DNA from: Octopus sinensis
Lineage: Eukaryota
Length of the DNA stretch: 38,653 bases
NCBI RefSeq assembly: GCF_006345805.1
Contig: NW_021828063.1
Coordinates: forward strand, 1-38,653
Direction of reading: 5' to 3'
Shown here: positions 13,852-38,653 of the stretch, in pieces
Numbering within the stretch: position 1 is the stretch's first letter
Layout of the letters: each line of letters opens with the position of its first letter
The notes under the pieces: model-generated
What the model saw: only the letters and a program-made list of their open reading frames with translations
The model's database searches: none
What the model was told of the DNA's origin: nothing
Made by a program: the position numbers and the translations under genes

Positions 13852-13970
13852 GGAAGATGATGATGATGAGGATGATGATGATGATGAGGATGATGATGAT
13901 GATGAGAATGATAATGATGATGATGATGATGATGATGATGATAATGATGATGATGATGATGATGATGATA

Positions 13971-14009
<39 letters not shown>
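8625..14009. repeat. Intronic (GAT/GAG)n array 2, ~5.4 kb, with kb-scale higher-order repeats
   Basis: Seen directly. Marker motifs GCAGGAGGAT, GATATTATTATGATGATGGT, TAAAGCTGCTGCT and GAGGATTATGAGGATGGAA recur in order. Confidence 0.97.
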
Positions 14010-14469: not shown

Positions 14470-14506
14470 GCAAGAGTACCAAGTGGTGTGTCTATTGCTG
14501 AAGCAG
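14470..14506 (+). CDS. Ankyrin micro-exon D (G-QEYQVVCLLLKQ), 37 nt
   Basis: Long pyrimidine tract plus TTTCAG at 14469; GTTAGT donor at 14507. Phase 2 to 0 bridges exons C and E exactly and completes an ankyrin helix. Confidence 0.85.
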
Positions 14507-17581: not shown

Positions 17582-17791
17582 GGTTCTGTTCAGTTGGATA
17601 TTCAAAACAATCAGAAAAGGACACCATTGCTTGAAGCCGTTTCCCGGGGTCACCTCGGAATGACACACAAGCTTATAGCCCTGGGTGCAAACATAAATGC
17701 TGTTGATGGTGAAGGTAACAGCTGTTTGCACCTGGCCGTGGAAAGAGAAGTGTTTGATTCCGAGGATGCACCCTTGGATTTACTAAACGAA
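17582..17791 (+). CDS. Ankyrin exon E (GSVQLDIQNNQKRTPLLEAVSRGHLGMTHKLIALGANINAVDGEGNSCLHLAVEREVFDSEDAPLDLLNE)
   Basis: Acceptor ..CTTCCACAAAG at 17581; donor GTAAGT at 17792; 210 nt, phase 0-0. Aligns with MIB1 LLVHQGNANLDIQN..TALHLAVERQH. Confidence 0.92.
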
Positions 17792-19419: not shown

Positions 19420-19595
19420 TGCTGCACTTCCCTTAACCTGAAAATAGAAGAAAGGCTCTCTGGTATAGTGGTTGCGAGATATCTCGCCAGCCAAGGAGCG
19501 GACTTTCACCATAAAAACAACAAAAATAACACACCATTGGACCTCATTAAGGACCCAAATTTGAGAAAAAAATTAGAAGCATTTTTACCACCACA
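19420..19595 (+). CDS. Terminal ankyrin exon F (CCTSLNLKIEERLSGIVVARYLASQGADFHHKNNKNNTPLDLIKDPNLRKKLEAFLPPQ)
   Basis: CATTTGTAG acceptor at 19419; GTAAGT donor at 19596; phase 0 to 2. The GAD...TPLDL..DPNL motif is typical of Mind bomb. Not represented in the ORF track. Confidence 0.92.
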
Positions 19596-22399: not shown

Positions 22400-24143
22400 A
22401 ATCAACAGGTGTATCGATTGAGGACCCTTATCAGCAGAGTTAGTTATTTGCCGAGGCTTTTTCGACAATTTTCAAACAAGATGATGGTCGTGAACCCCCT
22501 CCATTTGATAGATCGGTACCTCCAATGCCTAGATTGGTCATCACTCGGGATGAAGTCGAACGCGTTATTCAAGGCCTCGATATCAACAAGGGTCACGGCC
22601 CTGATGGCATACACCCACAGGGTATCAAAGTGTTGGATCCGGTCATCTGCCAACCTTTAACACTTCTATTCAATATGTCATTAGCGACGGGTGTTGTACC
22701 TGCGGACTAGAGAACAGCGATAATCTGCCCTATTTTCAAGAAAGGGTGCCGCAAAGACCCACTTAACTACCAACCGGTTTCCCTTACTTCAATATTCAGC
22801 AAGATGTTCGAAACCATCCTTAAGAAAAGTATGTTGCTCCACCTCCAAAACACAGCCTCTATCTCTGATTCCCAACACGGCTTCGTGCTGAAGAGATCAT
22901 GCTTGACCAGCTTACTGGTAATGGAAGAATTGGTGGCGCGTATCCTGGATGATGGTGATGCTGTTGACATCGTTTTATTGGACTTTGCCAATGCTTTTGA
23001 CTCGGTTAACCACCGCCTATTACTTGTCAAGCTTCAAGCATATAGTTTCCATCCGGATATTGTACGATGGGTTGGTGCCTTCCTCTCAGATCGCTCCTTC
23101 CAAGTCCAAGTTAATGGTTCGCGGTCCGACATCTCCAGTGCGAGCAGTGGCGTGCCTGAAGGTTCAGTGCTTGGGCCGTTATTGTTTTTAGTCTCCATAA
23201 ATGACTTGCCCGACGACCTCACGCAACACACCCTTCTATTTGCCGACGATGTCAAACTGGTTGCTCCTCGCAGTGATATAGAGGATCTTCGTCGATGCCT
23301 CCACCAAGTTCGGAGGTGGTCAAACAAACGGGACCTGTGTCTGAATGTGTCAAAGTGCTGTCATCTGCCTGTTGGCTCTCCTCCTGCAACTCAACTTGAT
23401 TTCGAGCCGGGTCGTCTGCTGCTGGAGAGGACCGATCAGGTAAAGGACCTGGGTATCTTGGTACATTCCTCCTTTTCGCCTTCGGCCCAGTGCGGCCATG
23501 CTGCCGCCAAATCACGCGGAGTTCTGTTCTTGATTCGACAGTCATTCTGAATGCTCACAGCAGCCATATTCCTACCGCTCTACGTCACGCCGGTGAGACC
23601 CATATTGGAGTACGGGATTCAAGCCTCTTCTCCTTATCTCCTCAAAGACATACATAATCTCGAAAGAGTCCAGAAGCTGGCTACCCGCATGGTTCTTGGT
23701 CTTAAGCATTTGTCTTATGAAGAAAGGCTGAAGACGCTCGACCTTTATTCTCTAGAAAAACGACGACGCCGTGGTGATCTCATTCTTGCTCACAACATCA
23801 TAAGCAGAAAGTGTAACCTCTCGAAAGAGCTGTTCTTTACTCCTGCTCGAGAGCGTCGGCTGCGGGGTCATTCCGAAAAGCTCTATCTATGACAATTTCA
23901 TCTCAATCGAAGGAGAGGGGCTTTCTCCGTCCGGGTTGCGGGTCCGTGGAATAAGCTGCCGGACGACATAGTGAAGATGTCGACGACCGGTCAGTTCAAA
24001 GTCTCCCTTGACCAGAAATGGTCTGAACTCTTTGTATGACCACCCTCTCTGTACATAACTCCCTGTCCTCCTACATAACCTTGCTTTTGCTTTTTGAGCC
24101 AATAAAAAAATGAATTGAAAAAAAATATTGAATTGAATTGAAT
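22400..24143 (+). mobile_element. 5'-truncated CR1-clade LINE (ORF2 reverse transcriptase part), inactivated by nonsense mutations
   Basis: One frame from ~22402 to 24039 carries KGHGPDGIHP, PIFKKG..NYQPVSLTS, QHGF, LDFANAFDSV, SGVPEGSVLGPLLF, LFADD, KDLG, LERVQ, RRRRGDLI and PWNKLP. Stops at 22441, 22708, 23548 and 23890. AATAAA at 24101 and a (TTGAA)n tail. Confidence 0.92.
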
Positions 24144-25028: not shown

Positions 25029-25168
25029 ATGTTTGTGGTGCAGAAATAAAGCGGCCACAACAAAAGTCCATCCATGTGGACACCTTGTAATATGTAAGGG
25101 ATGTTCAAACGTTCCACTTCAACAATGTCTGAAGTGTTTAAAACCTGTAACAAGCAGAGGTCGAGTTG
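25029..25168 (+). CDS. RING-finger (C3HC4, MIB/IAP-type) exon G (CLWCRNKAATTKVHPCGHLVICKGCSNVPLQQCLKCLKPVTSRGRV)
   Basis: TTTTGTCCACAG acceptor at 25028; the phase 2 start matches exon F. All eight Zn ligands are present. Donor G|GTAAGA at 25169 (phase 1); read-through would stop at 25186-25188. Confidence 0.92.
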
Positions 25169-26281
25169 GTAAGAATATTCTTTGCTGATCTGTCTGTTTG
25201 TCTGCTTGTCCCATTGCCCTTATTGTGTAGAATATATACTTCATGTTGTTATGTAGACAGAGGTCTGCCATAATCTGGCAGATTTATGATAAAAGGTGTT
25301 CCTAGTGTCTGTTCTCTGTAATAGTATATCTCTCACACTACATCCACTAAACATTGACCTTATCCAAGTAGGAACATGTCACACTTCAAGAGGGTTGTAG
25401 TCTGCAACATAAAGAAATGGACGATTCTGCAAGATAATTAGTGAGTTAACTGAAGTATCAATAAATCTCCATCAACTCTATAATTAATTATGAGTTATTA
25501 GAAGATAATTATGAGTTATTAGAAGATAATTAAATACAACAGTACTTACAAGGACATCAGTGTCATCTTTGTAAAAAGTATTAAATTCAGTAGAATATTT
25601 AAAGGAGTAAAATTATATGTCACTAGTTTGAGAGACTTTAACACACAATTCCATGTTGTTATGTTTGTAATTGGAGGATATTAAGGCTAATAGAGACAGT
25701 TTTGTTTGTCAAGCAACCAGATCATGAAACCTTCAAATATATCTTGAATGAGATGACATTCTGGTGAACTGTGAAGTTAAAATTAGGGATTATCAGCAAC
25801 AATGTTTAACAAAGAGATTAGGTGTATGTTTCTCCTTCTTGAAGTGGTTGTGACATGTGTTTGTTGTTATATCTTTGATGAATAAATTTGTTGACACTGG
25901 AATCAAACAGGTTGTTAGTGAAGATCAGGGTTTTGAAAATGCAATAGCTTTGGTATAGATATAAGCAAGGAAACCAAAGCCTACAGATAAACTGTTATTA
26001 AGTGATAATTAAGTGATATAATTACAGCATTGTTAGATTATGTAGGATATCTTAACAGAGAGAGGAAATTTACAAAGATCAACTAGAGTTCGTTTTGGAG
26101 CTAAATATTGGCTATTACATGGGTCCACTGTTGAAAGTATAAAAATATTGACCAAATCAATTATGATCGCTTGTTGGCCATTGATGGTATGAATGTTTCT
26201 CATTAATAAAATATAGATTATTAATAAATATAAAGGGATTGTGATATAAATAAATATAAAACTTGGAGACACATATTTCAG

Positions 26282-26332
26282 AGAGTCCAAAGTTTGAAGA
26301 GAAGGGAGTGTAGACTGTGGCAGCGACAGTTG
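26282..26332 (+). pseudogene. Micro-exon copy 1, disabled or terminal (E-SPKFEEKGV*TVAATV)
   Basis: Acceptor ATTTCAG is intact. There is a TAG at 26311-26313 where the other copies have Gln, and the donor reads ATGAGT instead of GTGAGT (26333). Confidence 0.8.
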
Positions 26333-27036
26333 ATGAGTTTAAAATTAGAGATCTTAATTAATTTCTATAGATTTTATCTTCACCTGAACTATTTTGCGTA
26401 TTAGAATGATGGAGAATAAATCCTATTTCTAATTTCCATTTGAAAGGTTGGCTCTAAAGTAATTGTATTAAAAATATTACTGAAATTTCATAAAGTCACG
26501 GTTAACATGTTTGGTTAAAAGGATAAATTAAATGCCACAACAGAGTTAATATTGTCTTCTGGAAGAGGGAACTATAATGTATTTTTTTTAGGTGTAAACT
26601 TGTGAGTTAATAAGATAGTTGTTTGTTTTTCTACTAAGATCTTTCGTAAGTTTTCTGATAGGTTATTCTTGATGTTGTTATGTAGCCAGATGTCTGTCAT
26701 AATATGTTGTATTTTCTGGGGCTGTGTACCCTGAATGTCTCTGGTTAGAATACATTTTGTAGTTGCAAATTAGAAAATTCTAATTAAATATTAACTCTGT
26801 ATAAGAATATTCATCATGAACTTAATTTTATTAAATGTTAAATTTAGTATTGAACCGTGAATATCTGTTTATATTTAAACAAATTATTGGTGTTTATACA
26901 AAATATACGATCAGAAATTGAATATGACTTGAATACACATATCTTTGTTTGTAACTATATATAATATACACTTATTACATTGTTTGAACAACATTACCAT
27001 CCTAATATTCTTTTTCTCACTCTTGTTAGATTTTAG

Positions 27037-27071
27037 ATGATATTAATGCTAAAAGAGGCACAGTTTTCTGA
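27037..27071 (+). CDS. Candidate alternative terminal exon (D-DINAKRGTVF*), copy 1
   Basis: A strong pyrimidine tract TTCTTTTTCTCACTCTTGTTAG then ATTTTAG; phase-1 compatible; near-identical copy at 28952-28986. No transcript evidence. Confidence 0.3.
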
Positions 27072-28030
27072 GTGTTTCACCCTTTGGTCTTGATTGTTGC
27101 ATTCAAGTTATTTAATGAAAGATAGTCATTGTTATTTGACCAGGAAATGAATTAGTCATTAGTATTTGGCAGTGACTTGGTTATATCTTTCTTCGTTTGC
27201 TCATGGAACTACCATAATATTAGCTGTGCTGAGACACAATCATATTCATAGTAATGAAGGTTATATGTTCTTTACTCAGATTATATACAATCTATATTGA
27301 TATCTAGTATTGCACCGTCAAGCACAGTGCTATTGTATCACATATATACCCAATTATCATGATAATTAATAAGCTATAATTCATTAACACTCTTACATTT
27401 GTATTTATGAAATGTAGTTTATTTTGTCATAAGAACATCGTGTACCCTCACCTTACATTTTATATCTTGTTAGGGATTATGTTGGGGAAGGGTGTATGGA
27501 ATTTGGCTTGTGCAGATGTATTTTAGGGGACAGATTGTGTGCAGAGTGGAGGGTATTCACATAAAGGACATATTTATGACCTCAGTTTCACTTAATTAGA
27601 GAGGAATGTTGATTAGTGAATTCTAGAGATGAGAGGACTGTGCCATGCCATAGATTTGGCACAGTTATAAGAAGAGAAAGACAAAGCTAAGAGAAAACTG
27701 TTATCAAGTGTTAATTAAATGAGATAATTGGTACATTGTTAGAATATTTAATGTGTTTTTAGAGAGAGAGAGTGAGAGAGAGAGAGAGAGAGAGAGAAAG
27801 ATAGGGAGAGGGCGGATTTAGAAATGTTAGTCTGTTTTATTGTGGACATATTGGGCTATTACATGGGACCACTTTAGAAAGTACAGAAATATTGACCAAA
27901 ACCATAATGGTCAACAGTTGACCAGTAACAACAGGAATTGAATGTCTCACAATAACAAGATAGATTTTAATAAAAATAAAGATAAAGAAATTCTACTATT
28001 AAATGTAAAACTTGTAAATGTTTATTTCAG

Positions 28031-28102
28031 CGTCTCCAAAGTTTGCAGACAAGGGAGTGCAAACAGATTTACAATTATTAGAGCCTACATCCGAGCAAAG
28101 TG
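28031..28102 (+). CDS. Micro-exon copy 2 (A-SPKFADKGVQTDLQLLEPTSEQS-G), 72 nt, with an LC8-type motif DKGVQTD
   Basis: TTTATTTCAG acceptor and G|GTGAGT donor; phase 1-1; open frame; homologous to copies 1 and 3-5. Confidence 0.78.
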
Positions 28103-28362
28103 GTGAGTATAAAATAAGAGTTCCCAATTGATTTCTATAAGATTTAATTTACCTGGGTATAATGTGTTTGAAAGAATAACTGAAAATAGGATCCACTCCT
28201 ACTTTCCAATTGAACGATTATCTGAATTATCTGAACGATTAATTGAATTAAAGATATCGATTTACTGAGAGTTTATGAAATACCCATTGAGGTTAATGCG
28301 TTGGTATAATTTTCAAATTAGAAGACACAATAGAGTTAATTTTATCATTTGGTCACAGACCT

Positions 28363-28650
28363 CATCATCATCATCATCATCATCATCATTTAACGTCCGT
28401 TTTTATAGTAGCATGGGTCGGACGATTTCACTGGCAAGGCAGTAGGCTGCGCCAGGCCCAACGTGATCTGGCAGGTTTCCACATATGTATGCCATTCCTA
28501 ATGCCAACCACTCCGAGGAGAGTGTGGTGGGTGCTTTTGAGTGCCCCCACACAGGAGCCAGTTGAGGTGGGAGCTAGCATTGACCACGTCGGATCGTGCT
28601 TTTTACTTTCCCCCCGCACAGGGAACCAGCCAGGCGGAACTTGCAAACAA
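28363..28650 (-). mobile_element. 3' end of an RTE-associated retroposon with a (GAT)9 tail
   Basis: (CAT)9-TTAACGTCCG..AGCATGGGTCGGACG and CCTAATGCCAACCAC are characteristic RTE/SINE 3' sequence in reverse; it interrupts the duplicated intron unit. Confidence 0.65.
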
Positions 28651-28951
28651 ACCACTAATAACATTTTATAAATTAAAAGGATTAAAAATCAAATCTCTAA
28701 GATTATAAGTATAATGATCATTAACGTTGATTAAATTAAATTTGCATTGAACGGTGAACATCTGTTTACATTTAAACAAAATATTGGTGTTGACATAACA
28801 TATAAAGATAGGAATAAAATATGAGTTCCTGTGTGACTTGATCTCAACAAATCCTTGTTTTTAACTATATATAATATACACTTATTACATTGTTTGAACA
28901 ACATTTACCATCCATATAGTCATTCTTTTTCTCACTCTTGTTAGATTTTAG

Positions 28952-28986
28952 ATGATATTAATGCTAAAAGAGGCACAGTTTTCTGA
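28952..28986 (+). CDS. Candidate alternative terminal exon (D-DINAKRGTVF*), copy 2
   Basis: Identical coding sequence and acceptor to 27037-27071. No transcript evidence. Confidence 0.3.
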
Positions 28987-29039
28987 GTGTTTCACCTCTG
29001 GTTTTAGTTCTGACTTGATTGTTGCATTCAAATTTGACT

Positions 29040-29310
29040 ACTCCCACAGCTGTTGTCATCCTTTGTCAGGTTCAACTTCTTATTTCCTTCAATTTGGATC
29101 TTCTGGCACTTTTTTATCCACATTTTTTAAATCCCCCATACTCCTCCCATATATGTACCATCTCGTCTCTTGTGTGCTATCTCTGAATCTGCTAAACCCT
29201 AGTTTTGCTTCCAGCTCATCTCTGCTCCGGGACTTCAGCACATTATATTACACTTCTTCTGAAGTAGCTCACTTCATTTCTAACAGTTTTTCATACATCC
29301 TCTATACTCT
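29040..29310 (-). mobile_element. Highly degenerate RTE LINE fragment
   Basis: The reverse translation SRDELEAKLGFSRFRDSTQETRWYIYGRSM resembles the RTE C-terminal ..ERRLRWYGHV.RM region. Confidence 0.4.
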
Positions 29311-29319
29311 GTGAAACAT

Positions 29320-30355
29320 TCCACTTTACAAATACACACCAGAGTTCACCAACGATTAGTCCTCAGCCCCCTCCTATTCATTATAGTCCTCCAGACAATA
29401 AAAGAGGAATTCAAGACACTCTGCCCCTGGGATCCTCTTTATGCTGATGACCTTGCTCTGACAAACGAGTCACTGCCAGGACTGGAAACAAAGTTTAGCG
29501 TCTGAAAGCAAGGTCTAGAATCGAAGGGCCTTAGAGTTAACCTAGTCAAAACCAAAGTCCTTGTTAGTAGGAAGGCTGTTAAATCACAACCCCTTTCAGG
29601 TAGATGGCCCTGCTCTATCTGTAGAAATGGAGAGGGTAGAAACTCCACACGATGTAACCGGAGGAAGCTATGGACACATAAAAGGTGCAGCAATATCAAA
29701 GAAAGTTAACCAGGAAAATAGTTTTTGTGTGTGGCAGATGCTCTGGAGCAATAAACACTGAAAGTGTACAGAAAACAGATTCCATCACATGCCAGGGGAA
29801 GAAACTAGAAGTAGTTAATAGCTTCTGCTACCTAGGGGATCAAGTCTGTAGTGAGTGCGATTGCTCTGCGAATGTAGCGCCTAGAGTAAGAATAGCCTGG
29901 GCAAAGTTGAGGGAGCTCCTACCTCTGCTGGCAACTAAAGGTATATCGCTCAGGGTGAAAGGTAGACTGCATGATGCATGTGTGCGAACAGCCATGTTAC
30001 AGGGCAGGGAAACATGGGCCATGATGCTGAGAACATGCGTAGGCTTGAAAGAAATGAAGCTTGTATGATCCGCTGGATGTGTAATGTCAGTGTGCAATCA
30101 CGACAAAGTTGGGCATAAGAAGCATCAAATGTGGTGTGCAAGAGAGGCGACTGTGCTGGTATGGTCATGTGTTACGTATGAATGAAGACAGCTGTGTGAT
30201 GAAGTGCCACTCCCTCACTGTAGAAGGAACCTGTAGAAGAGGTAGACCCAGGAAGACATGGGATGAGGTGATGAAGTATGACCTTCAAACATTGGCCTCA
30301 CAATGGCAATAACAAGACACCGGGATCTTGGGAGATACGCTTAGATTGAGAAAAC
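29320..30355 (+). mobile_element. RTE-clade LINE fragment, frameshifted
   Basis: VHQ..VLSPLLFIIVL, LYADDLAL, FCYLGD, RVRIAWAKLRELLPLL..KGISLRVKGRL, ERRLCWYGHVLRM and RRGRPRKTWDEV, spread across several frames. Confidence 0.88.
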
Positions 30356-30499
30356 CCCCTAGTGAATTCACCCACACACTGTTGGGGTGTATGCGCAATA
30401 GTCCTCTAAATCCAAAATATTGACACCCATCAATACAGTAAGCATTTTGCATTCACTTTTACTCCGTATTTTGGCGACATTGAATATAAATTTCGAAGA

Positions 30500-31760
30500 G
30501 GCAACAATGCGCATTCGTTAACCTTTGTGCCAGTAATTTGGTCACGGAAATAATTTACTGGAACCTTTGATTTAAGTGATCATATGGTGCGGAAATCACA
30601 GCAACTGAGCAAAGAAGAGGCTATTTTGGCTCATCCTGACCCAAGGAAAGGTACGTCCCGGACGTCAGAATCGGAGGAATATTCACGTTGTTGTGCAGCT
30701 AAAAAGGGAAATTGTTACTGTAATTGAGAACGGATTAAAAGTCCACCGACTAAAATAGCCATTGCTTGTGAATCTTCAGAAATAGTTTTTGTGTGGATTA
30801 CAAGGAAAACGCTGGATATAATAAGTAGATTTTTGTAAGTTTTAGAATTGCAACTGAAATGAACGGATAATACAATTGTATGAGTCGGAGGAATATTCGC
30901 TTCTTTGTGACTTGCAACCAAATGCTGTGTTCAAGTTACTACCTCCTCAGGCAACCTTCAGTATGTGTCTGTGAGAATCACCAACATGCAAAACGTATCG
31001 CCGCTGCCATTCCTGGTAGTCACGACTACAGAGACTTGCTTGGCAAATGGTCTCTTCCGTGAGCAATCGAGATTGTATGTTGCTCCTATGTGAGGTCCTG
31101 TCCTTTGAACAAGGTTTTTTATTAGACGTATTTTATTCACTTGGAGGTTATTAACGCACAAACAGTTGGCACATGTGGACTGGTCAGCTCCTCCTTTATG
31201 ACTCAACTTCCCCATTAATGCCTTCATTCAAACCGCTGAGAGTGTGTTTTGAATCTCCACAACAACATCATTTCATAGCAGAGGCCCAATCTTGTTTCCT
31301 TAATCATCAAAAAGGTGACCTGACATCAAGTGAAGCAATAGTATTGTTGGACTTTACAGAAAATTATAGCTTTGTAGTACAGGACGCCCTGCAAGGGTTT
31401 CATCGGAACAAATCCCAGGCAAATATTCATCCATTCGCGATCTACTATAAGACTGGTTCACACCCACAATGCACTTCAATCTGTGTCATATCTGATTGTT
31501 TGAAATGTGACAACCACATTGTGCATGCTTATATTACAAGGGTGATATCGCATATAAAGACAGAACTTCCATTCATAAACCATCTCCTGTACTTCAGTGA
31601 CGGAGCAGCCGACCAATACAAGAACTAGAGACACCAAACAAATCTCTGTCATCATCAGAATGATCAAGGACTTGCAGCAGAGTGGCATTTTTCTCCATGT
31701 TATATGCAAAAAAGTCAGCAAGTAGCCACAGAAAGACATTTTCTCACGGATCCCAAGGTG
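30500..31760 (+). mobile_element. Degenerate DDD/E DNA-transposon transposase, Sola2-like
   Basis: SVCVCENHQ, NRDCML, LLDFTENYSFVVQDALQGFH, IHPFAIYY, YFSDGAADQYKN and LAAEWHF match the DF.ENY / SDG...QYKN / EWHF motifs recalled for Sola-type transposases. The superfamily assignment is less certain than the transposase call. Confidence 0.6.
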
Positions 31761-32482
31761 TGTAGCTGAGTATGTGCAAGCATTCCAGGAATAATGTTCT
31801 TTTACGTCTGAAACGAAAACAGTAGAACAGTGAAATTAATTGGCACACGATCCCATCACTGCTTCATTCTTTCTTCAAGATCTGATCTTCTAATGAAAAG
31901 AATATCAGCCGATGACAATTTCACTCTTTTAGGTGAGGAGCAGCCAGCATCTGAGCTGCATATTTCAAAGTTACAACCCTGAAAATATGTTGGATACACG
32001 AATGAAAATGTTTAACAAAGAGATCAAGTGAGCAGGTTTATTCTACGTGAAGTGTCTGTCATGTGTTTATGGTAAGATCATTGATGACAAACTGGTTGCC
32101 ATCGGATTAGCAAAGATGAAATAATGTTGGTTAGAGAAGGGCAGAAGTGAGGGCACAATTTCACGTCATATGTTTAGTGCAGATATAAGAAAGGAAAGAC
32201 AAACCTAATAAAAGATTGGTGTTATCAAGTGATAATTAAATGAAATAATGACACAGTTGTTAGATTATGTCGAATGTCTCAAGAGATAAAAGACATTTTG
32301 GAAGACTGTAAATATTAAACTATTAAATAGTAATCCTGTTCAAACTATAAACATTCTAACCAAAATTATTGTCTTCAACAGTTGATTATCTATGAAAGGA
32401 ATCCCTGATGTAAAATATAGATTATTAATAAAGATGGAGAAATTTTTCTATAATGTTTGAAACTTGGAAATATTTATTTCAG

Positions 32483-32533
32483 TGAATCGAACATTTGAAG
32501 TCAAGGAAACACAGACATTGGCTGAACCTGTTG
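32483..32533 (+). CDS. Micro-exon copy 3 (V-NRTFEVKETQTLAEPV-G), 51 nt, KETQT motif
   Basis: TATTTATTTCAG acceptor, G|GTGAGT donor, phase 1-1, open frame. Confidence 0.78.
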
Positions 32534-32841
32534 GTGAGTATAAAATAACAGCACTTGATTGATTTCTGTAAGGTTTATTCTCTGCTGAACTATTTTGATA
32601 TCAGAATGATAAAGATCAGCTTCCATTCTTACCTTTCAATGGGAAGTTTTAGCAGTAAACTAATCATATTAAACATATCGATACTATTGACATTTCATAA
32701 AGTATCCAATCAGGTTAGCATGGTTGGTGAAATGGATAAATTAGAAGCGAAATAGATTTCAGGTTCTCTTTTGGAACAGCCAAATAATATATGTTGTGGT
32801 TTAACAGGTGAGGTAATGACAAAGGTTTTGTTTGTTTTATA

Positions 32842-33261
32842 CTCTTTTACTCGGTTCAGTCATTTGACTGTCACCATGCTGGAGCACCACCTTTTTAGTC
32901 GACCAAATCGACCCTAGGACTTATTCTTTGTAAGCCTAGTACTAATTCTATCGGTCTCTTTAGCCAAACCGATGCATTACCTAGACGGAAACACACCAGC
33001 ACCGGTTGTCAAGCAATGTTGGGAGGACAAACACATACACACATACATACATACATACATACATACATACATACATACATACATACATACATACATACGA
33101 CGGGCTTCTTTCAGTTCCTGTCTACCAAAGCAACTTACAAGGCTTTGGTTGGCTCGAAGATATAGAAGAAGACACTTGCCCAAGGTGCCACACAGTGGGA
33201 CTGGACCCAGAACCATCTAGTTCGTAAGCAAGCTACTTACCACACAGCCACTCCTACGCCT
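32842..33261 (-). mobile_element. SINE in unit A
   Basis: Reverse complement of the SINE family; same insertion site in units B and C. Confidence 0.88.
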
Positions 33262-34606
33262 GTATTTTAAAAATGTTTACTGACAAGATATTCTTGTTAT
33301 TTTACCTGATGTCTCTCATAATCTGGCAGACTTGCAATGAAACGGGTTCCAAATATGACCACCCTCATATTTTTCACTGATAATAAATCTATCATTGCAT
33401 CCAGTAAACATTGTCTTTATTCAAGTGGAAGACGTTGGTTTGCTGCTCAGAAAACCGTTGTCTCTTTCCCTTTCTTCAAACTTCATAGAGGCTGTATGAT
33501 ACAATACAATCAAATACATTCAAAGAAACATCGGACGGGTTGAAAGGAGAACGGATAGTGAACACCTTAGATAAAAGCTCCTTAAGAACCCTTCTGATGG
33601 TACTAGGATATTTTTGCCGATGTTAAGTGGGGGAGATTATAATGCACTAAAGATGAAGTGAACAAGAATATACGGGAGACATAAGAGGACGTAGTGTTTC
33701 TTGGTTACAAGACCACATCCATACGAACCGTGATTATAGTCCCTATGTTTCAGTATGTTTTGATGGTATTGTGTTTTCGATTCATTTCATAGGAAACACT
33801 ATGTTGTGGAACATTTCTGTATACATACTTGACACTAATTAGATGTATTTTATAAAGCATTTTAGAAACATTTTCAATTAGTTGACATCAATGATCATTA
33901 GTCACAAATGTGGTAAAACAGTGATGGTGGAATGGGGTATGAGCAGGGTTTCATATTCCTTGTAATGTGGGTAACATCAGGAAGATTTCTACAGAGGTGT
34001 TCATTTCGTCCCCTCAGATTTGATTGAACTGAGTTTTCAGCCCCTTCAGAGGCACCGCATTGATTAAGGGGACATCAAAGGAGAGACGAATGTTTGGTTG
34101 ATATATAGAAGAGGGTTGTCAGAAATATCCTAGAGTCTTCAGAATCACTTCCATTCTACCACTTAAAGTGGTGTGTGTAATGTGTTTATGGTTAGATCAT
34201 GGATAACCAAATTGGTTGCCATTGGAATTAAGCAAAGATGAGAATAATGTTGGTTAGAGAAGGGCAGAAGTGAGGGCACAATTTCACGTCATATGTTTAG
34301 TGCAGATATAAGAAAGGAAAGACAAACCTAATCAAAGATTGGTGTTATCAAGTGATAATTAAATGAAATAATGACACAGTTGTTAGATTATGTCGAATGT
34401 CTCAAAAGATAAAGGAAATTTTGGAAAGCAGTGTAAATATTAAACTATTACAGGGTAATCCTGTTGAAACTATAAACATTCTAACCAAAATTATTGTCTT
34501 CAACAGTTGATTATCTATGAAAGGAATCCCTGATATAAAATATAGATTATTAATAAAGATAGAGAATTTTTTTTAAATGTTTGAAACTTGGAAATATTCA
34601 TTTCAG

Positions 34607-34657
34607 TGAATCGAACATTTGAAGTCAAGGAAACACAGACATTGGCTGAACCTGTTG
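34607..34657 (+). CDS. Micro-exon copy 4 (V-NRTFEVKETQTLAEPV-G), identical to copy 3
   Basis: Same splice sites; 51/51 identity with copy 3. Confidence 0.78.
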
Positions 34658-34965
34658 GTGAGTATAAAATAACAGCACTTGATTGATTTCTGTAAGGTTT
34701 ATTCTCTGCTGAACTATTTTGATATCAGAATGATAAAGATCAGCTTCCATTCTTACCTGTCAATGGGAAGTTTTAGCATTAAACTAATCATATTAAACAT
34801 ATCGATACTATTGACATTTCATAAAGTATCCAATCAGGTTAGCACGGTTGGTGAAATGGATAAATTAGAAGCAAAATAGATTTCAGGTTCTCTTTTGGAA
34901 CAGCCAAATAATATATGTTGTGGTTTAACAGGTGAAGTAATGACAAAGGTTTTGTTTGTTTTATA

Positions 34966-35348
34966 CTCTTTTACTCGGTTCAGTCATTTGACTGACACCA
35001 TGCTGGAGCAACACCTTTTAAGTCGACCAAATCGACCCCAGGACTTATTCTTTGTATGCCTAGTACTTATTCTATCTGTCTCTTTAGCCAAACCGATAAG
35101 TTACACGGACGGAAACACACCAGCACCGGTTGTCAAGCAATGTTGGGAGGACAAACACATACACACATACATACATATATATATACTATATACATACATA
35201 TATACATACATACAACATACATACGACGGGCTTTGGTTTGCTCGAGGCTATAGTAAAAGACACTTGCCCAAGGTGCCACACAGTGGGACTGAACCCAGAA
35301 CCATCTGGTTCGCAAGCAAGCTACTTACTACACAGCCACTCCTACGCC
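34966..35348 (-). mobile_element. SINE in unit B, with an internal deletion shared with unit C
   Basis: Same position as in unit A; lacks the TCTTTCAGTT..CAAGGC segment. Confidence 0.88.
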
Positions 35349-37004
35349 TTTATTTTAATAATGTTTACTGACAAGATATTCTTGTTATTTTAGCTAATGT
35401 CTCTCATAATCTGGCAGACTTACAATGAAACGGGTTCCAAATATGACCACCCTCTTATTTTTCACTGATAATAAATCTATCATTGCATCCACTAAACATT
35501 GTCTTTATTCAAGTGGAAGACATTCGTTTGCTGCTCAGAAAACCGTTGTCTCTTTCCCTTTCTTCAAACTTCATAGAGGCTGTATGATACAATACAATCA
35601 AATACATTCAAAGAGACATCGGACGGGTTGCAAAAGGAAAGGATAGTGAACACTTTAAATTGCAGCTCCTTAAGAACCCTGCTTACGGTGCTAGGATTCT
35701 TTTTGCAGCCGCTAAGAGCAGCAGATTATAACGAAATAAAGATGAAGTGAGCAAGAATATACAGGAGCTATAAGAGGACCCTGTGTTTCTTGGTTACAAG
35801 ACCACATCCATACGAACCGTGATTATAGTCCCTATGTTTCAGTATGTTTTGATGTTATTGTGTTTTCGATTCATTTCATAAGGAACACTATGTTGTGGAA
35901 CATTTCTGTATACGTATTTGACACTAATTAGATGTATTTTATAAAACATTTTAGAAACATTTTCAATTAGTTGACGTCAATGATCATTAGTGACAAATGT
36001 GGTAAAACAGTGATGGTGGAATGGGGTGTGAGCAGGGTTTCATATTCCTTGTAATGTTGTTAACTACGACATCAGGACGACCGTTTTCTGTCAGGTAAAT
36101 ATTTCTACAGAGGTGTCCATTTTGTCCCCTCAGATTTGATTGAACTGAGTTTTCAGCCCATTCAGAGGCACCGCATTGATTAAGGGGACATCAAAGGAGA
36201 GATGAAAGTTTGGTTGATATATAGAAGAGGGTTGTCAGAAATATCCTTGTGTTTTCAGAATCACTTCCATTCTACCATTTCAGATCTTTGCACTGCTATA
36301 ATGTAAGGACGAAGAGTTACCTGTAGTAGGGTGAAGTTTGTGCAAGTGTATCCTCTTTGAGGACACCTGCTATCATTTTCTGTTCCACCTGTGTAGAAGT
36401 AATCTTCACTCACCTTTATAAACACTGCTCTATTAAGGTGTTTTAAAGCATTTCATGCATCAGCTGACATTCTGGTGAACAGTGATGCAGGAAGTTGAAA
36501 ACTAATCATTACCTGCAGTAATGTTTAAGAAGGAGATCAGGTGTGAGTGTTTATACAACTTAAAGTGGTGTGTGTAATGTGTTAATGGTTAGATCATTGA
36601 TGACCAAACTGGTTGCCATCGGAATTAAGCAAAGATGAGAATAATGTTGGTTAGAGAAGGGCAGAAGTGAGGGCACAATTTCACGTCATATGTTTAGTGC
36701 AGATATGAGAAAGGAAAGACAGACCTAATAAAAGATTGGTGTTATCAAGTGATAATTAAATGAAATAATGACACAGTTGTTAGATGACGTCGAATGTCTC
36801 AAAAGATAAAGGAAATTTAGGAAGGCAGTGTAAATATTAAACTATTACATGGTAATCCTGTTCAAACTATAAACATTCTAACCAAAACCTTTGTCTTCAA
36901 CAGTTGATTATCTATGAAAGGAATCCCTGATATAAAATATAGATTATTAATAAAGATAGAGAAATGTTTCTAAAATGTTTAAAACTTGGAAATATTCATT
37001 TCAG

Positions 37005-37055
37005 TGAATCGAACATTTGAAGACAAGGAAATGAAGACACTGGCTGAACCTGTTG
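37005..37055 (+). CDS. Micro-exon copy 5 (V-NRTFEDKEMKTLAEPV-G), TQT anchor changed to MKT
   Basis: Splice sites intact, phase 1-1, five substitutions relative to copy 4. Confidence 0.75.
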
Positions 37056-37359
37056 GTGAGTATAAAATAACAGCACTTGATTGATTCCTGTAAGGTTTAT
37101 CTTCTGCTTATTTTGATATCAGAATGATAAAGATCAGCTTCCATTCTTACCTGTCAATGGGAAGTTTTAGCATTAAACTAATCATATTAAACATATCGAT
37201 ACTATTGACATTTAATAAAGTATCCAATCAGGTTAGCATGGTTGGTGAAATGGATAAATTAGAAGCAAAATAGATTTCAGGTTCTCTTTTGGAACAGTCA
37301 AATAATATATGTTGTGGTTTAACAGGTGAAGTAATGACAAAGGTTTTGTTTGTTTTATA

Positions 37360-37738
37360 CTCTTTTACTCGGTTCAGTCATTGACTGTCACCATGCTCCA
37401 CCTGCTGGAGCCCCACCTTTTTAGTCGACCAATTGACCCTAGACTTATTCTTTGTATGCCTAGTACTTATTCTATCTGTCTCTTTAGCCAAACTGCTATG
37501 GTACGGGGACGGAAACACACCAGCACCGGTTGTCAAGCAATGTTGGGAGGACAAACACATACACACATACATACATACATACATATATACATACATACAT
37601 ACAACATACATACGACGGGCTTTGGTTGGCTCGAGGCTATAGTAGAAGACTCTTGCCCAAGGTGCCACACAGTGGGACTGAACCCAGAACCATCAAGTTC
37701 GTAAGCAAGATACTTGCCACACAGTCACTCCTACGCCT
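37360..37738 (-). mobile_element. SINE in unit C
   Basis: Same insertion site and same internal deletion as in unit B. Confidence 0.88.
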
Positions 37739-38653
37739 GTATTTTAAAAATGTTTACTGACAAGATATTCTTGTTATTTTACCTGATGTCTCTCATAATC
37801 TGGCAGACTTACAACGAAACGGGTTCCAAATATGACCACCCTCTTATTTTTCACTGATAATAAATCTATCATTGCATCCAGTAAACATTGTCTTTATTCA
37901 AGTGGAAGACGTTGGTTTGCTGCTCAGAAAACCGTTGTCTCTTTCCCTTTCTTCAAACTTCATAGAGGCTGTATGATACAATACAATCAAATACATTCAA
38001 AGAGACATCGGACGGGTTGAAAGGAGGATAGTGACACACCTAGATAAAAGCTCCTTAAGAACCCTTCTGATGGTACTAGATTTTTTGCCGATGTTAAGTG
38101 GGGAGATTATAATGCACTAAAGATGAAGTGAACAAGAATATACGGGACATATACAAGATCCAAGCGAAGTCAACTTTACCTGCTCATGTTTGGATTGAAA
38201 TGTCCATGAAACCAGTAATCAATATTTCAGCTTTGCGATTTCAGCAAGAAACAAGTATAAACTTAGTGAAGAAGGCAAGAACGGAGATTGCAACGGGAGG
38301 TGATGTGTACCATAGAACGTGTACAAATGTTTGCCCAGGTGTTATAAGCATTATTACTATTTAGGGAGTTGTGGGATAAAGTGGACTGATTGATGAATGG
38401 TGCAAGACAAAAGGATTTTATTCATCAAAGTAAGTTTGCAGAACTAAGTGACCAATTGAAGCCAATTTCAATCTTGACTGGCAAGATTTACATTGGTGTA
38501 CTTGCCATGAAATCAGCTACATGTCAGCAAAATAATGGTTATATGACAGAAATATCCAGAACTAGAATCCGGAGAATGTCTGTGTGTGTGAACATGTATT
38601 TTAAATCTGGATACCATATAAAAAGCAAAGAAGAATAAAAGGGATTCGGATGT

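What the first reader, a model, noticed from the sequence alone, without database searches (positions are those of the whole stretch)
26282..37055. Tandem symmetric micro-exons build a multivalent LC8/DYNLL-binding tail on a Mind bomb-like E3 ligase
Seen: five homologous phase-1/phase-1 micro-exons (51, 72, 51, 51, 51 nt), none visible in the ORF track, follow the phase-1 donor of the RING exon. They encode PKFEEKGV*T, PKFADKGVQTD, TFEVKETQT, TFEVKETQT and TFEDKEMKT. Established: the LC8 (DYNLL1/2) anchor consensus is [DS]-K-x-[TVI]-Q-T-[DE], and KETQT is the dynein intermediate chain site. Arrays of such motifs in disordered tails (ASCIZ, Nup159) form LC8-zippered dimers. Inference: exon duplication has built a one-motif-per-exon LC8 ladder at ~17-residue spacing. 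Any exon can be skipped without a frameshift, so splicing could set the valency and hence the dimerisation, localisation or activity of the ligase. I do not know of this architecture in canonical Mind bomb proteins.
Basis: partly seen in the sequence, partly recalled or inferred. Interest (0 to 1): 0.88.

Follow-up and report, generated by a model that had tools for sequence, protein, structure and literature searches.

The report
Octopus RING ligase with LC8-motif micro-exons
Five tiny repeated exons behind the RING exon of an octopus ubiquitin-ligase gene are real. Four are already in the public gene model, and they build a flexible linker that in relatives leads to a Death domain; only one exon clearly looks like a docking site for the dimer-forming protein LC8, two look weak, and two look dead.

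Summary
**Observation: confirmed.**
- All five units sit at the stated coordinates, with the stated sizes (51/72/51/51/51 nt), phase 1-1 and the stated peptides.
- Units 2-5 have AG/GT splice sites. Unit 1 has an in-frame TAG and an AT donor.
- The RefSeq model of this contig (XP_036354558.1, Octopus sinensis "MIB2-like") already splices RING exon > unit 2 > 3 > 4 > 5.

**Interpretation: partly supported.**
- The "tail" is a linker. In paralogs the same exon chain runs on into a two-exon Death domain; the contig ends before it.
- The protein is not a true Mind bomb. It has ankyrin repeats, one RING and a Death domain, but no MIB/HERC2 or ZZ domain.
- It belongs to a large family seen here only in Octopus: at least 55 exon-1 copies and at least 118 Death-domain exons.
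- Annotated isoforms of three genes differ by exactly whole units.
- Exons with intact flanks never carry a stop (0 of 64, about 8.5 expected). Missense change is near neutral (pN/pS about 0.86).

**LC8 scoring** (matrix from 79 validated binders):
- Unit 2, ADKGVQTD, scores strong.
- Units 3 and 4, EVKETQTL, are borderline.
- Unit 5 scores as a non-binder.
- About a third of family units are canonical. Large subfamilies carry VQA or VKT instead.

LC8 binding is plausible but unproven.

The parts
530..708 (+). Exon 1 (start ATG at 530, first ankyrin repeat). The frame is broken near 676-680.
   Evidence: this copy matches only residues 1-49 of 61, while at least 50 paralogous copies are open over 59-61 residues.
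3815..3967 (+). Ankyrin exon. It contains the internal Met (3947) at which the RefSeq model starts.
   Evidence: tblastn; splice contexts.
7838..7992 (+). Ankyrin exon.
14470..14506 (+). Short exon (QEYQVVCLLLKQ).
   Evidence: it is present in P0010.
17582..17791 (+). Ankyrin exon.
19420..19595 (+). Exon before the RING exon. It is 100% identical to the product of another locus (P0002).
25029..25168 (+). RING exon (zf-C3HC4_3) with a phase-1 donor G|GTAAGA. If the donor is not used, the frame stops 7 codons later (GKNILC*, stop at 25186-25188).
   Evidence: Pfam on P0010: 28.3 bits against a cut-off of 27. P0004 of O. bimaculoides ends the same way.
26282..26332 (+). Unit 1: a dead or pseudo micro-exon (SPKFEEKGV*TVAATV). 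It has an in-frame TAG and an AT donor.
   Evidence: The four copies fetched from other contigs (three distinct sequences) keep CAG (Q) but share the ATGAGT donor. The RefSeq model skips this unit.
28031..28102 (+). Unit 2: a 72-nt phase 1-1 exon (ASPKFADKGVQTDLQLLEPTSEQS). This is the strongest LC8-like site, ADKGVQTD.
   Evidence: Matrix score 16.7: 75th percentile of validated binders and above all 32 decoys.
32483..32533 (+). Unit 3: a 51-nt phase 1-1 exon (VNRTFEVKETQTLAEPV). It has the KETQT core but V at -4 and L at +2.
   Evidence: Score 8.7, borderline. Positional rules are in PMC6607443.
34607..34657 (+). Unit 4: its exon is identical to unit 3.
37005..37055 (+). Unit 5: a 51-nt exon (VNRTFEDKEMKTLAEPV). 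The anchor is degraded to MKT.
   Evidence: Score -0.9, a predicted non-binder.
32031..38653 (+). Three tandem 2.1-2.4 kb duplicated blocks, each carrying one micro-exon. The third runs to the end of the contig.
   Evidence: Repeat families D1-D3, D5-D7, D10, D14 and D16, mostly 82-98% identical.

Best explanation
**What it is.** The window holds most of one member of a large family of E3 ligases seen here only in Octopus. The layout is ankyrin repeats, one C-terminal-type RING, a linker encoded by phase 1-1 cassette micro-exons, then a C-terminal Death domain. In this copy the Death domain lies beyond the contig end.

**Origin (shown).** The micro-exon units arose by tandem duplication of the first Death-domain exon together with its intron flanks.

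**Linker (shown).** It stays stop-free but otherwise evolves almost freely. The number of units varies through gene-level duplication, and exon skipping appears in annotated isoforms.

**Mechanism (inferred).** In this gene, unit 2 (ADKGVQTD), and probably more weakly units 3 and 4 (EVKETQTL), bind the conserved octopus LC8 dimer. LC8 would zip two linker chains in register and bring together two RINGs and two Death domains. How many units are spliced in would set how strongly that happens.

**Dead units.** Unit 1 is dead (stop codon, lost donor). Unit 5 has lost the anchor.
For: **Exons are real**
- Splice sites and phases.
- The RefSeq model of this contig uses units 2-5.
- 84 flank-defined units against 0 controls.
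- 0 of 64 with a stop, about 8.5 expected.
- Intron flanks are 79% alike among diverged units and the exon 68%, as expected for regulated cassette exons.
- Isoforms differ by whole units in O. bimaculoides (563/545/528 aa and 424/407 aa) and O. sinensis (210/184 aa).

**Death domain downstream**
- P0001 continues from KETQT units into a Death domain.
- Pfam Death scores 43.9 and 45.1 bits in full-length members.
- The order RING > units > Death exon recurs on many contigs.

**Origin from the Death-domain exon**
- nhmmer E = 1.6e-14 and alignment A1.

**LC8**
- Motif identities with validated sites.
- Matrix scores.
- Every hit scoring at least 12 in 61 family proteins (16,711 residues) falls in the linker.
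- Shuffled tails give 0.07 hits against 3 observed.
- The 17-residue anchor spacing equals that of 53BP1 (Q1155 and Q1172), and FAM83D is 18.
- Octopus LC8 is identical to mammalian DYNLL2 over residues 33-89.
Against: - There are no binding data and no RNA reads. Isoform evidence is at annotation level only.
- Units 3 and 4 carry V at -4 and L at +2. PMC6607443 lists both features as unfavourable. Their score equals the median of TQT-containing non-binders.
- Family-wide pN/pS is about 0.86, with no excess of third-position changes.
- K at -3 and the terminal E-P are the best-kept residues, not Q or T.
- Roughly two thirds of the 84 flank-defined units have non-canonical anchors (VQA, VKT, SQR) yet stay in frame. 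The repeat therefore persists without an LC8 site.
- VQT may be a relic of the LQD segment near the start of the Death-domain exon the units derive from.
- This copy has a broken exon 1.
- The single-sequence AlphaFold model was too poor to say anything firm about disorder.
Confidence: 0.5

Rival explanations
1. The micro-exons encode only a disordered spacer of variable length between RING and Death domain. Under this view the LC8-like motifs are incidental: they were inherited from the duplicated Death-domain exon (…[KR]-C-L-Q-D-V-A… drifting to …K-x-V-Q-T-V-A…) and are not selected for LC8 binding.
For: - pN/pS is about 0.86, and anchor positions change as often as other positions.
- Large subfamilies with KAVQAV or KAVKTV are kept in frame and amplified.
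- The units are homologous to Death-domain exon 1.
- Units 3 and 4 score only borderline, and unit 5 scores as a non-binder.
- Some family members join the RING straight to the Death domain with no unit at all (P0018, P0019, P0027, P0030).
Against: - K-x-[V/T/I]-Q-T recurs in otherwise very different unit contexts in O. bimaculoides, O. vulgaris and O. sinensis: EEKEVQTV, TKQVQTV, EKGVQTV, SDKGVQTV, EDRCVQTE, AEKEIQTE, KDKETQTQ.
- Several of these score like validated binders.
- Changes at -1 stay largely within T/V/I.
Confidence: 0.3
2. This particular copy (unplaced 38.6 kb contig) is a decaying duplicate or a haplotig with errors, so its tail is not made even though the family architecture is functional elsewhere. 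This is not exclusive of the other explanations.
For: - Exon 1 is frame-broken only in this copy.
- Unit 1 has a TAG where paralogs have CAG.
- Unit 5 has MKT where a paralog has MQT.
- The RefSeq model starts at an internal Met and runs into the intron at the contig end.
- Three other contigs hold RING exons 99% identical to this one.
Against: - Long-read assemblies often carry single-base indel errors (own knowledge).
- All other exons are open with good splice sites.
- Units 2-4 are intact.
Confidence: 0.25
3. The units are not expressed exons at all. They would be artefacts of ab initio gene prediction on a repeated non-coding element.
For: I could reach no RNA data. Intron flanks are as conserved as the exons or more so, as a non-coding repeat could also show.
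Against: - There are no stops in 64 distinct units where about 8.5 were expected, while the other two frames are full of stops.
- Length is strictly 51 or 72 nt, phase is 1-1 and splice sites are canonical.
- The position is always between the RING exon and the Death-domain exon.
- The two units whose donor is mutated away from GT/GC are not seen spliced onward: the unit-1 type is skipped or read through in gene models, and the other is L021.
- Multiple RefSeq isoforms exist in three species.
Confidence: 0.04

Closest known systems
Multivalent LC8 (DYNLL) clients: ASCIZ/ATMIN, Nup159, Chica/FAM83D, RSP3, 53BP1
   Same: - Several 8-residue motifs with a T/V/I-Q-T anchor sit in a low-complexity stretch.
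- The 17-residue spacing lies within the range seen in known clients: 53BP1 17, FAM83D 18, RSP3 20-25.
- The expected effect is in-register duplexing of two chains (PMC10046861).
   Different: - Each motif here is its own symmetric micro-exon inside a tandemly duplicated genomic unit, so valency can change by splicing and by copy number.
- Motif quality is mixed in this gene (1 strong, 2 borderline, 1 dead), and many family units lack the anchor.
- Binding is untested.
Mind bomb E3 ligases (MIB1, MIB2)
   Same: Ankyrin repeats are followed by a zf-C3HC4_3 RING whose end (C-x-K-C-x-K-P-V-T-S-R-G-R-V) lines up with the C-terminal RING of MIB proteins. RefSeq names the genes "MIB2-like" or "MIB1-like".
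   Different: - There is no MIB/HERC2 domain and no ZZ finger, and only one RING.
- Canonical MIB proteins end a few residues after the last RING (own knowledge). Here a donor inside that position leads on to the linker and a Death domain.
Ankyrin plus Death-domain proteins (ANKDD1, ankyrins, DAPK1, NF-kB p100/p105) and invertebrate Death-domain expansions
   Same: Ankyrin repeats are combined with a C-terminal Death domain in a lineage-specific expanded family.
   Different: - A RING sits between the two, and a micro-exon repeat linker follows it.
- I found no description of this layout in the searchable literature.
Regulated cassette micro-exons (for example neuronal micro-exons)
   Same: They are short (51 nt) and symmetric, their flanking intron sequence is conserved more than the exon, and they encode surface or disordered peptide inserts that can alter interactions.
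   Different: They are arrayed as tandem near-identical copies produced by recent segmental duplication. Tissue regulation is unknown.

Membership tests
Mind bomb (MIB1/MIB2) E3 ligases | N-terminal MIB/HERC2 domains flanking a ZZ zinc finger | tested here: not met
   A Pfam scan of full-length family members P0053, P0017 and P0025 finds only Ank, zf-C3HC4_3 and Death. Exon 1 of the window gene starts directly in an ankyrin repeat.
Mind bomb (MIB1/MIB2) E3 ligases | Ankyrin repeat block followed by two or three C-terminal RING fingers | tested here: not met
   Ankyrin repeats are present, but there is a single RING per protein and one RING exon in the window.
Multivalent LC8/DYNLL clients | Two or more 8-residue motifs matching validated LC8 sites (T/V/I-Q-T/V anchor and favourable -4, -3 and +2 positions) | tested here: inconclusive
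   Scores from a matrix built on 79 binders of PMC6607443 Table S4: unit 2 = 16.7 (strong), units 3 and 4 = 8.7 (9th percentile of binders, median of decoys), unit 5 = -0.9.
Multivalent LC8/DYNLL clients | Motifs lie in an intrinsically disordered region | tested here: inconclusive
   The AlphaFold2 single-sequence model of P0001 shows no secondary structure in residues 1-117, but pLDDT is below 50 throughout. Near-neutral missense evolution fits disorder.
Multivalent LC8/DYNLL clients | The organism encodes an LC8 with the conserved binding groove | tested here: met
   There are 22 Dynein_light matches. The ORF at C25:12066054 is 89 aa, scores 188 bits to DYNLL2 (1pwj), and is identical over residues 33-89.
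Multivalent LC8/DYNLL clients | Physical binding to LC8 and LC8-dependent dimerisation | not testable with these tools
   This needs ITC, pull-down or SEC-MALS. No multimer structure prediction was available.
Death-domain superfamily (C-terminal module of the gene family) | Significant match to the Death domain profile | tested here: met
   PF00531 scores 43.9 bits (P0017) and 45.1 bits (P0025) against a cut-off of 22.6. P0001 scores 20.5 bits, just below the cut-off. The domain is not present inside the window.
Alternatively spliced cassette micro-exons | Symmetric phase, canonical splice sites, and isoforms that differ by the exon | tested here: met
   Phase 1-1 and AG/GT sites. RefSeq isoforms differ by exact units in three genes. 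This is annotation-level evidence only.
Alternatively spliced cassette micro-exons | Junction-spanning RNA reads for inclusion and skipping | not testable with these tools
   No RNA-seq access. No transcript-derived proteins appeared in the protein search.

The most novel reading that the evidence does not exclude
A gene family of about 50 to more than 100 loci, seen here only in Octopus, encodes ankyrin-RING-Death-domain ligases. It turned duplicates of its own first Death-domain exon into a bank of cassette micro-exons, each encoding one LC8-binding site. Splicing and copy number would then programme how many LC8 dimers clamp two chains together. That in turn would set RING dimerisation and Death-domain assembly in cell-death or immune signalling. 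It would be the first splice-tunable multivalent LC8 scaffold.
Probability: 0.25. Interest if true: 0.75.

Novelty: new variant of a known kind. Interest (0 to 1): 0.5.

Why it matters
Multivalent LC8 clients are known, but their valency is fixed in the protein sequence. Here each candidate site is a separate symmetric micro-exon in a tandemly duplicating unit. If LC8 binds, the number of clamps could be set by splicing and could change quickly in evolution.

The finding also uncovers an undescribed, strongly expanded ankyrin-RING-Death-domain family in Octopus. It gives a clear example of a folded-domain exon being duplicated and recycled into a disordered, motif-bearing linker.

The hypothesis is directly testable with a few peptides and existing octopus RNA-seq. 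If LC8 does not bind, what remains is an ordinary repeat-expanded linker in an already annotated gene.

Tried and rejected
- **Death-domain exons in the window.** I looked for them with tblastn; none are present, because the contig ends first.
- **Locus of P0001.** An exact-sequence look-up found nothing on record. I located it on C11230 by genome search instead.
- **Bulk fetch of 20 paralog regions.** I worked from the about 3 kb loci already held, plus the sequences printed by the pattern search.
- **AlphaFold2 of P0001 without an alignment.** It gave mean pLDDT 40.6, so I used it neither for fold search nor as proof of disorder.
- **Selection test.** I expected purifying selection on the TQT anchor. 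The minimum-spanning-tree substitution count showed near-neutral missense change and no special conservation of Q and T, so I lowered the LC8 claim.
- **Other short motifs.** I considered TRAF-binding, caspase-site and KFERQ-like readings of the unit by eye. None fits the conserved K-x-V-Q-T core.
- **Transposable-element origin of the unit.** Rejected. Copies occur only between RING and Death exons of this family, always on the gene strand.
- **Literature.** I found no prior description of the octopus family or of LC8 motifs in micro-exons.
Full report
**1. What is in the sequence**

The window is the whole 38,653-base contig C4534 of a 2.72 Gb assembly with 13,516 contigs. The protein databases identify the assembly as Octopus sinensis.

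The exon limits are given below.

| Unit | Coordinates | Size |
|---|---|---|
| 1 | 26282-26332 | 51 nt |
| 2 | 28031-28102 | 72 nt |
| 3 | 32483-32533 | 51 nt |
| 4 | 34607-34657 | 51 nt |
| 5 | 37005-37055 | 51 nt |

- Each unit is preceded by a pyrimidine-rich tract ending in TTTCAG.
- Units 2-5 are followed by GTGAGTATAAAAT.
- All are phase 1-1 and fit the phase-1 donor of the RING exon (25029-25168, GTTG|GTAAGA).
- Unit 1 has an in-frame TAG, and its donor reads ATGAGT.
- Units 3-5 sit in three tandem blocks of 2.1-2.4 kb that are 94-98% identical, introns included. Units 1 and 2 are older copies.

**2. The exons are real and already annotated**

A protein search with my conceptual splice product returned Octopus "MIB2-like" models. 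An exhaustive HMMER search returned P0010. This is XP_036354558.1, the RefSeq product of this very contig.

P0010 joins RING > unit 2 > 3 > 4 > 5 exactly as proposed and skips unit 1. It then runs into the intron (GEYKITALD*) because the contig ends.

I then ran a test that does not depend on the exon interior. The pattern TTTCAG-N51-GTGAGTATAAAAT has 84 matches in the genome and none with the reversed control.
- The 64 distinct 51-mers have no stop in the proposed frame. In the other two frames 38 and 57 of them have stops.
- Given the observed substitution spectrum, about 8.5 stop-creating changes were expected among 213 substitutions on a minimum spanning tree. Poisson P is about 2e-4.
- Among diverged unit types the intron flanks are more alike than the exon: 79% against 68%. 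This is typical of regulated cassette exons.

Annotated isoforms differ by exactly whole units:
- O. bimaculoides XP_014776758 (563 aa), XP_014776763 (545 aa) and XP_014776764 (528 aa);
- O. bimaculoides XP_014768682.2 (424 aa) and XP_052833829 (407 aa);
- O. sinensis XP_036354468 (210 aa) and XP_036354469 (184 aa).

I had no access to RNA reads, so this is annotation-level support only.

**3. It is a linker, not a tail, and the gene is not a true Mind bomb**

The paralog product P0001 (contig C11230) runs through three KETQT units and two RPKFKEKASQRV units. It then enters a two-exon domain that Pfam reads as Death: 20.5 bits, just under the cut-off.

Full-length family members score 43.9 and 45.1 bits for Death. 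They otherwise contain only ankyrin repeats and one zf-C3HC4_3 RING, with no MIB/HERC2 and no ZZ domain.

In the genome, the order RING exon > units > Death exon on one strand recurs on many contigs. The family is large:
- at least 55 exon-1 copies;
- at least 40 RING exons;
- at least 118 Death-domain exons.

The window has no Death-domain exon. The third duplicated block runs into the contig end.

All linker-bearing relatives whose source I looked up are from O. sinensis, O. vulgaris or O. bimaculoides. Among 1.84 billion representative proteins, the only non-octopus hit identified was a weak coral Death-domain hit.

**4. Where the units came from**

The first Death-domain exon of C11230 is 72 nt and phase 1-1. 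It matches the unit profile through both intron flanks (nhmmer E = 1.6e-14; alignment A1).

At the peptide level, Death exon 1 reads …PKLEERCLQDVAKLLG… and the units read …PKFEDRCVQTEATCQELG… or …PKFEEKGVQTVAE…. The units are therefore tandem duplicates of the exon for the start of the Death domain. They have since been released from the fold.

**5. The LC8 question**

*For LC8 binding:*
- KETQT is the human dynein intermediate-chain site (SYSKETQTP, TYTKETQTP), and yeast Pac11 uses TYDKGIQTD (PMC3145545).
- Validated binders include ZFPM1 SDKGVQTP, gephyrin EDKGVQCE and BMF EDKATQTL (PMC6607443 Table S4).
- I built a log-odds matrix from those 79 binders. Leave-one-out median for binders is 14.6. 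The median for 32 TQT-type non-binders is 8.8.
- Unit 2 (ADKGVQTD) scores 16.7, which is above every decoy.
- Paralog units score as follows: KDKETQTQ 17.0, EDKASQTE 14.3, SDKGVQTV 13.7, EDRCVQTE 13.1, AEKEIQTE 12.9.
- All hits of at least 12 in 61 family proteins lie in the linker. Shuffled tails give 0.07 hits where 3 are seen.
- The 17-residue spacing equals that of the two 53BP1 sites.
- The genome encodes a canonical LC8 that is identical to mammalian DYNLL2 over residues 33-89. Motif rules from other animals should therefore transfer.

*Against LC8 binding:*
- Units 3 and 4 (EVKETQTL) score only 8.7. V at -4 and L at +2 are both classed as unfavourable (PMC6607443).
- Unit 5 (EDKEMKTL) scores -0.9.
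- Across the 64 distinct units, pN/pS is about 0.86 and there is no third-position excess.
- The least-changed residues are K at -3 and the terminal E-P, not Q or T.
- About a third of the 84 units are canonical. Large, recently amplified subfamilies with 166-nt periods on C27, C10645, C10766 and C11515 carry KAVQAV or KAVKTV and stay in frame.
- The repeat therefore persists without an LC8 site. VQT could partly be a relic of the ancestral LQD.

**6. Verdict**

- The structural part has high confidence: cassette micro-exon linker, RING to Death domain, and origin by exon duplication.
- LC8 binding has about even odds for unit 2. It is less likely for units 3 and 4.
- This copy also shows signs of decay or assembly error. 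Exon 1 is frame-broken in this copy, unlike the other exon-1 copies detected. Unit 1 carries a TAG. Unit 5 has a degraded anchor.
- I found no prior description of this family or of exon-modular LC8 motifs.

Noticed in passing
window 530-708: Exon 1 of the gene is frame-broken near 676-680: …AKLGAKD then GSTALHWAVEG continues in another frame. At least 50 paralogous exon-1 copies elsewhere in the genome are open over the whole exon. This is either decay of this copy or an assembly indel. It explains why the RefSeq model starts at an internal Met (3947).
   Followed up: partly
window 828-3744 and 8624-14008: Two giant trinucleotide arrays lie inside introns: (ATG)n of about 973 copies and (GAT)n of about 1794 copies. 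They produce the long poly-D/S/H/I/M pseudo-ORFs in all frames.
   Followed up: partly
window 22711-23547 and 29284-30312: Reverse-transcriptase fragments lie in introns. The first scores RVT_1 98.5 bits; a piece of the second (29284-29502) scores RVT_1 17.2 bits, below the cut-off. The second swells the intron between units 2 and 3 to 4.4 kb.
   Followed up: partly
L066 6090-6266 (G000:C11230:18089-18265) versus window units: The first Death-domain exon (72 nt, phase 1-1) shares both intron flanks with the micro-exon units. The linker repeats are therefore duplicated copies of a Death-domain exon.
   Followed up: yes
G000, 22 places; for example L067 (C25:12066054-12066305): The genome has at least 22 Dynein_light (LC8 family) matches, about 16 of them full-length and stop-free in a single reading frame. 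One is a canonical DYNLL2-like LC8. I did not examine whether the others are retrogenes or a real expansion.
   Followed up: partly
window 19420-19595: This exon is 100% identical at protein level to the product of another locus (P0002), while the neighbouring exons are only 78-86% identical to it. This suggests gene conversion or mosaic paralogs.
   Followed up: no
window 25169-25188: If the RING-exon donor is not used, the frame ends after GKNILC*. An O. bimaculoides model (XP_014783436.1) ends the same way (GKNTLC*). A short form lacking linker and Death domain may therefore also be made.
   Followed up: no
G000:C27:15807859-15808888, C11515:86-1480, C10645:29208-30103, C10766:24757-25490: Arrays of 5-9 micro-exons have a 154-166 nt period (51-nt exon plus an intron of about 103-115 nt). 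They encode CPKSEEKAVQAVVESV or CPRCREKAVKTVVESF. These are very short introns, and the repeat type lacks the LC8 anchor but often carries a CxxC.
   Followed up: no
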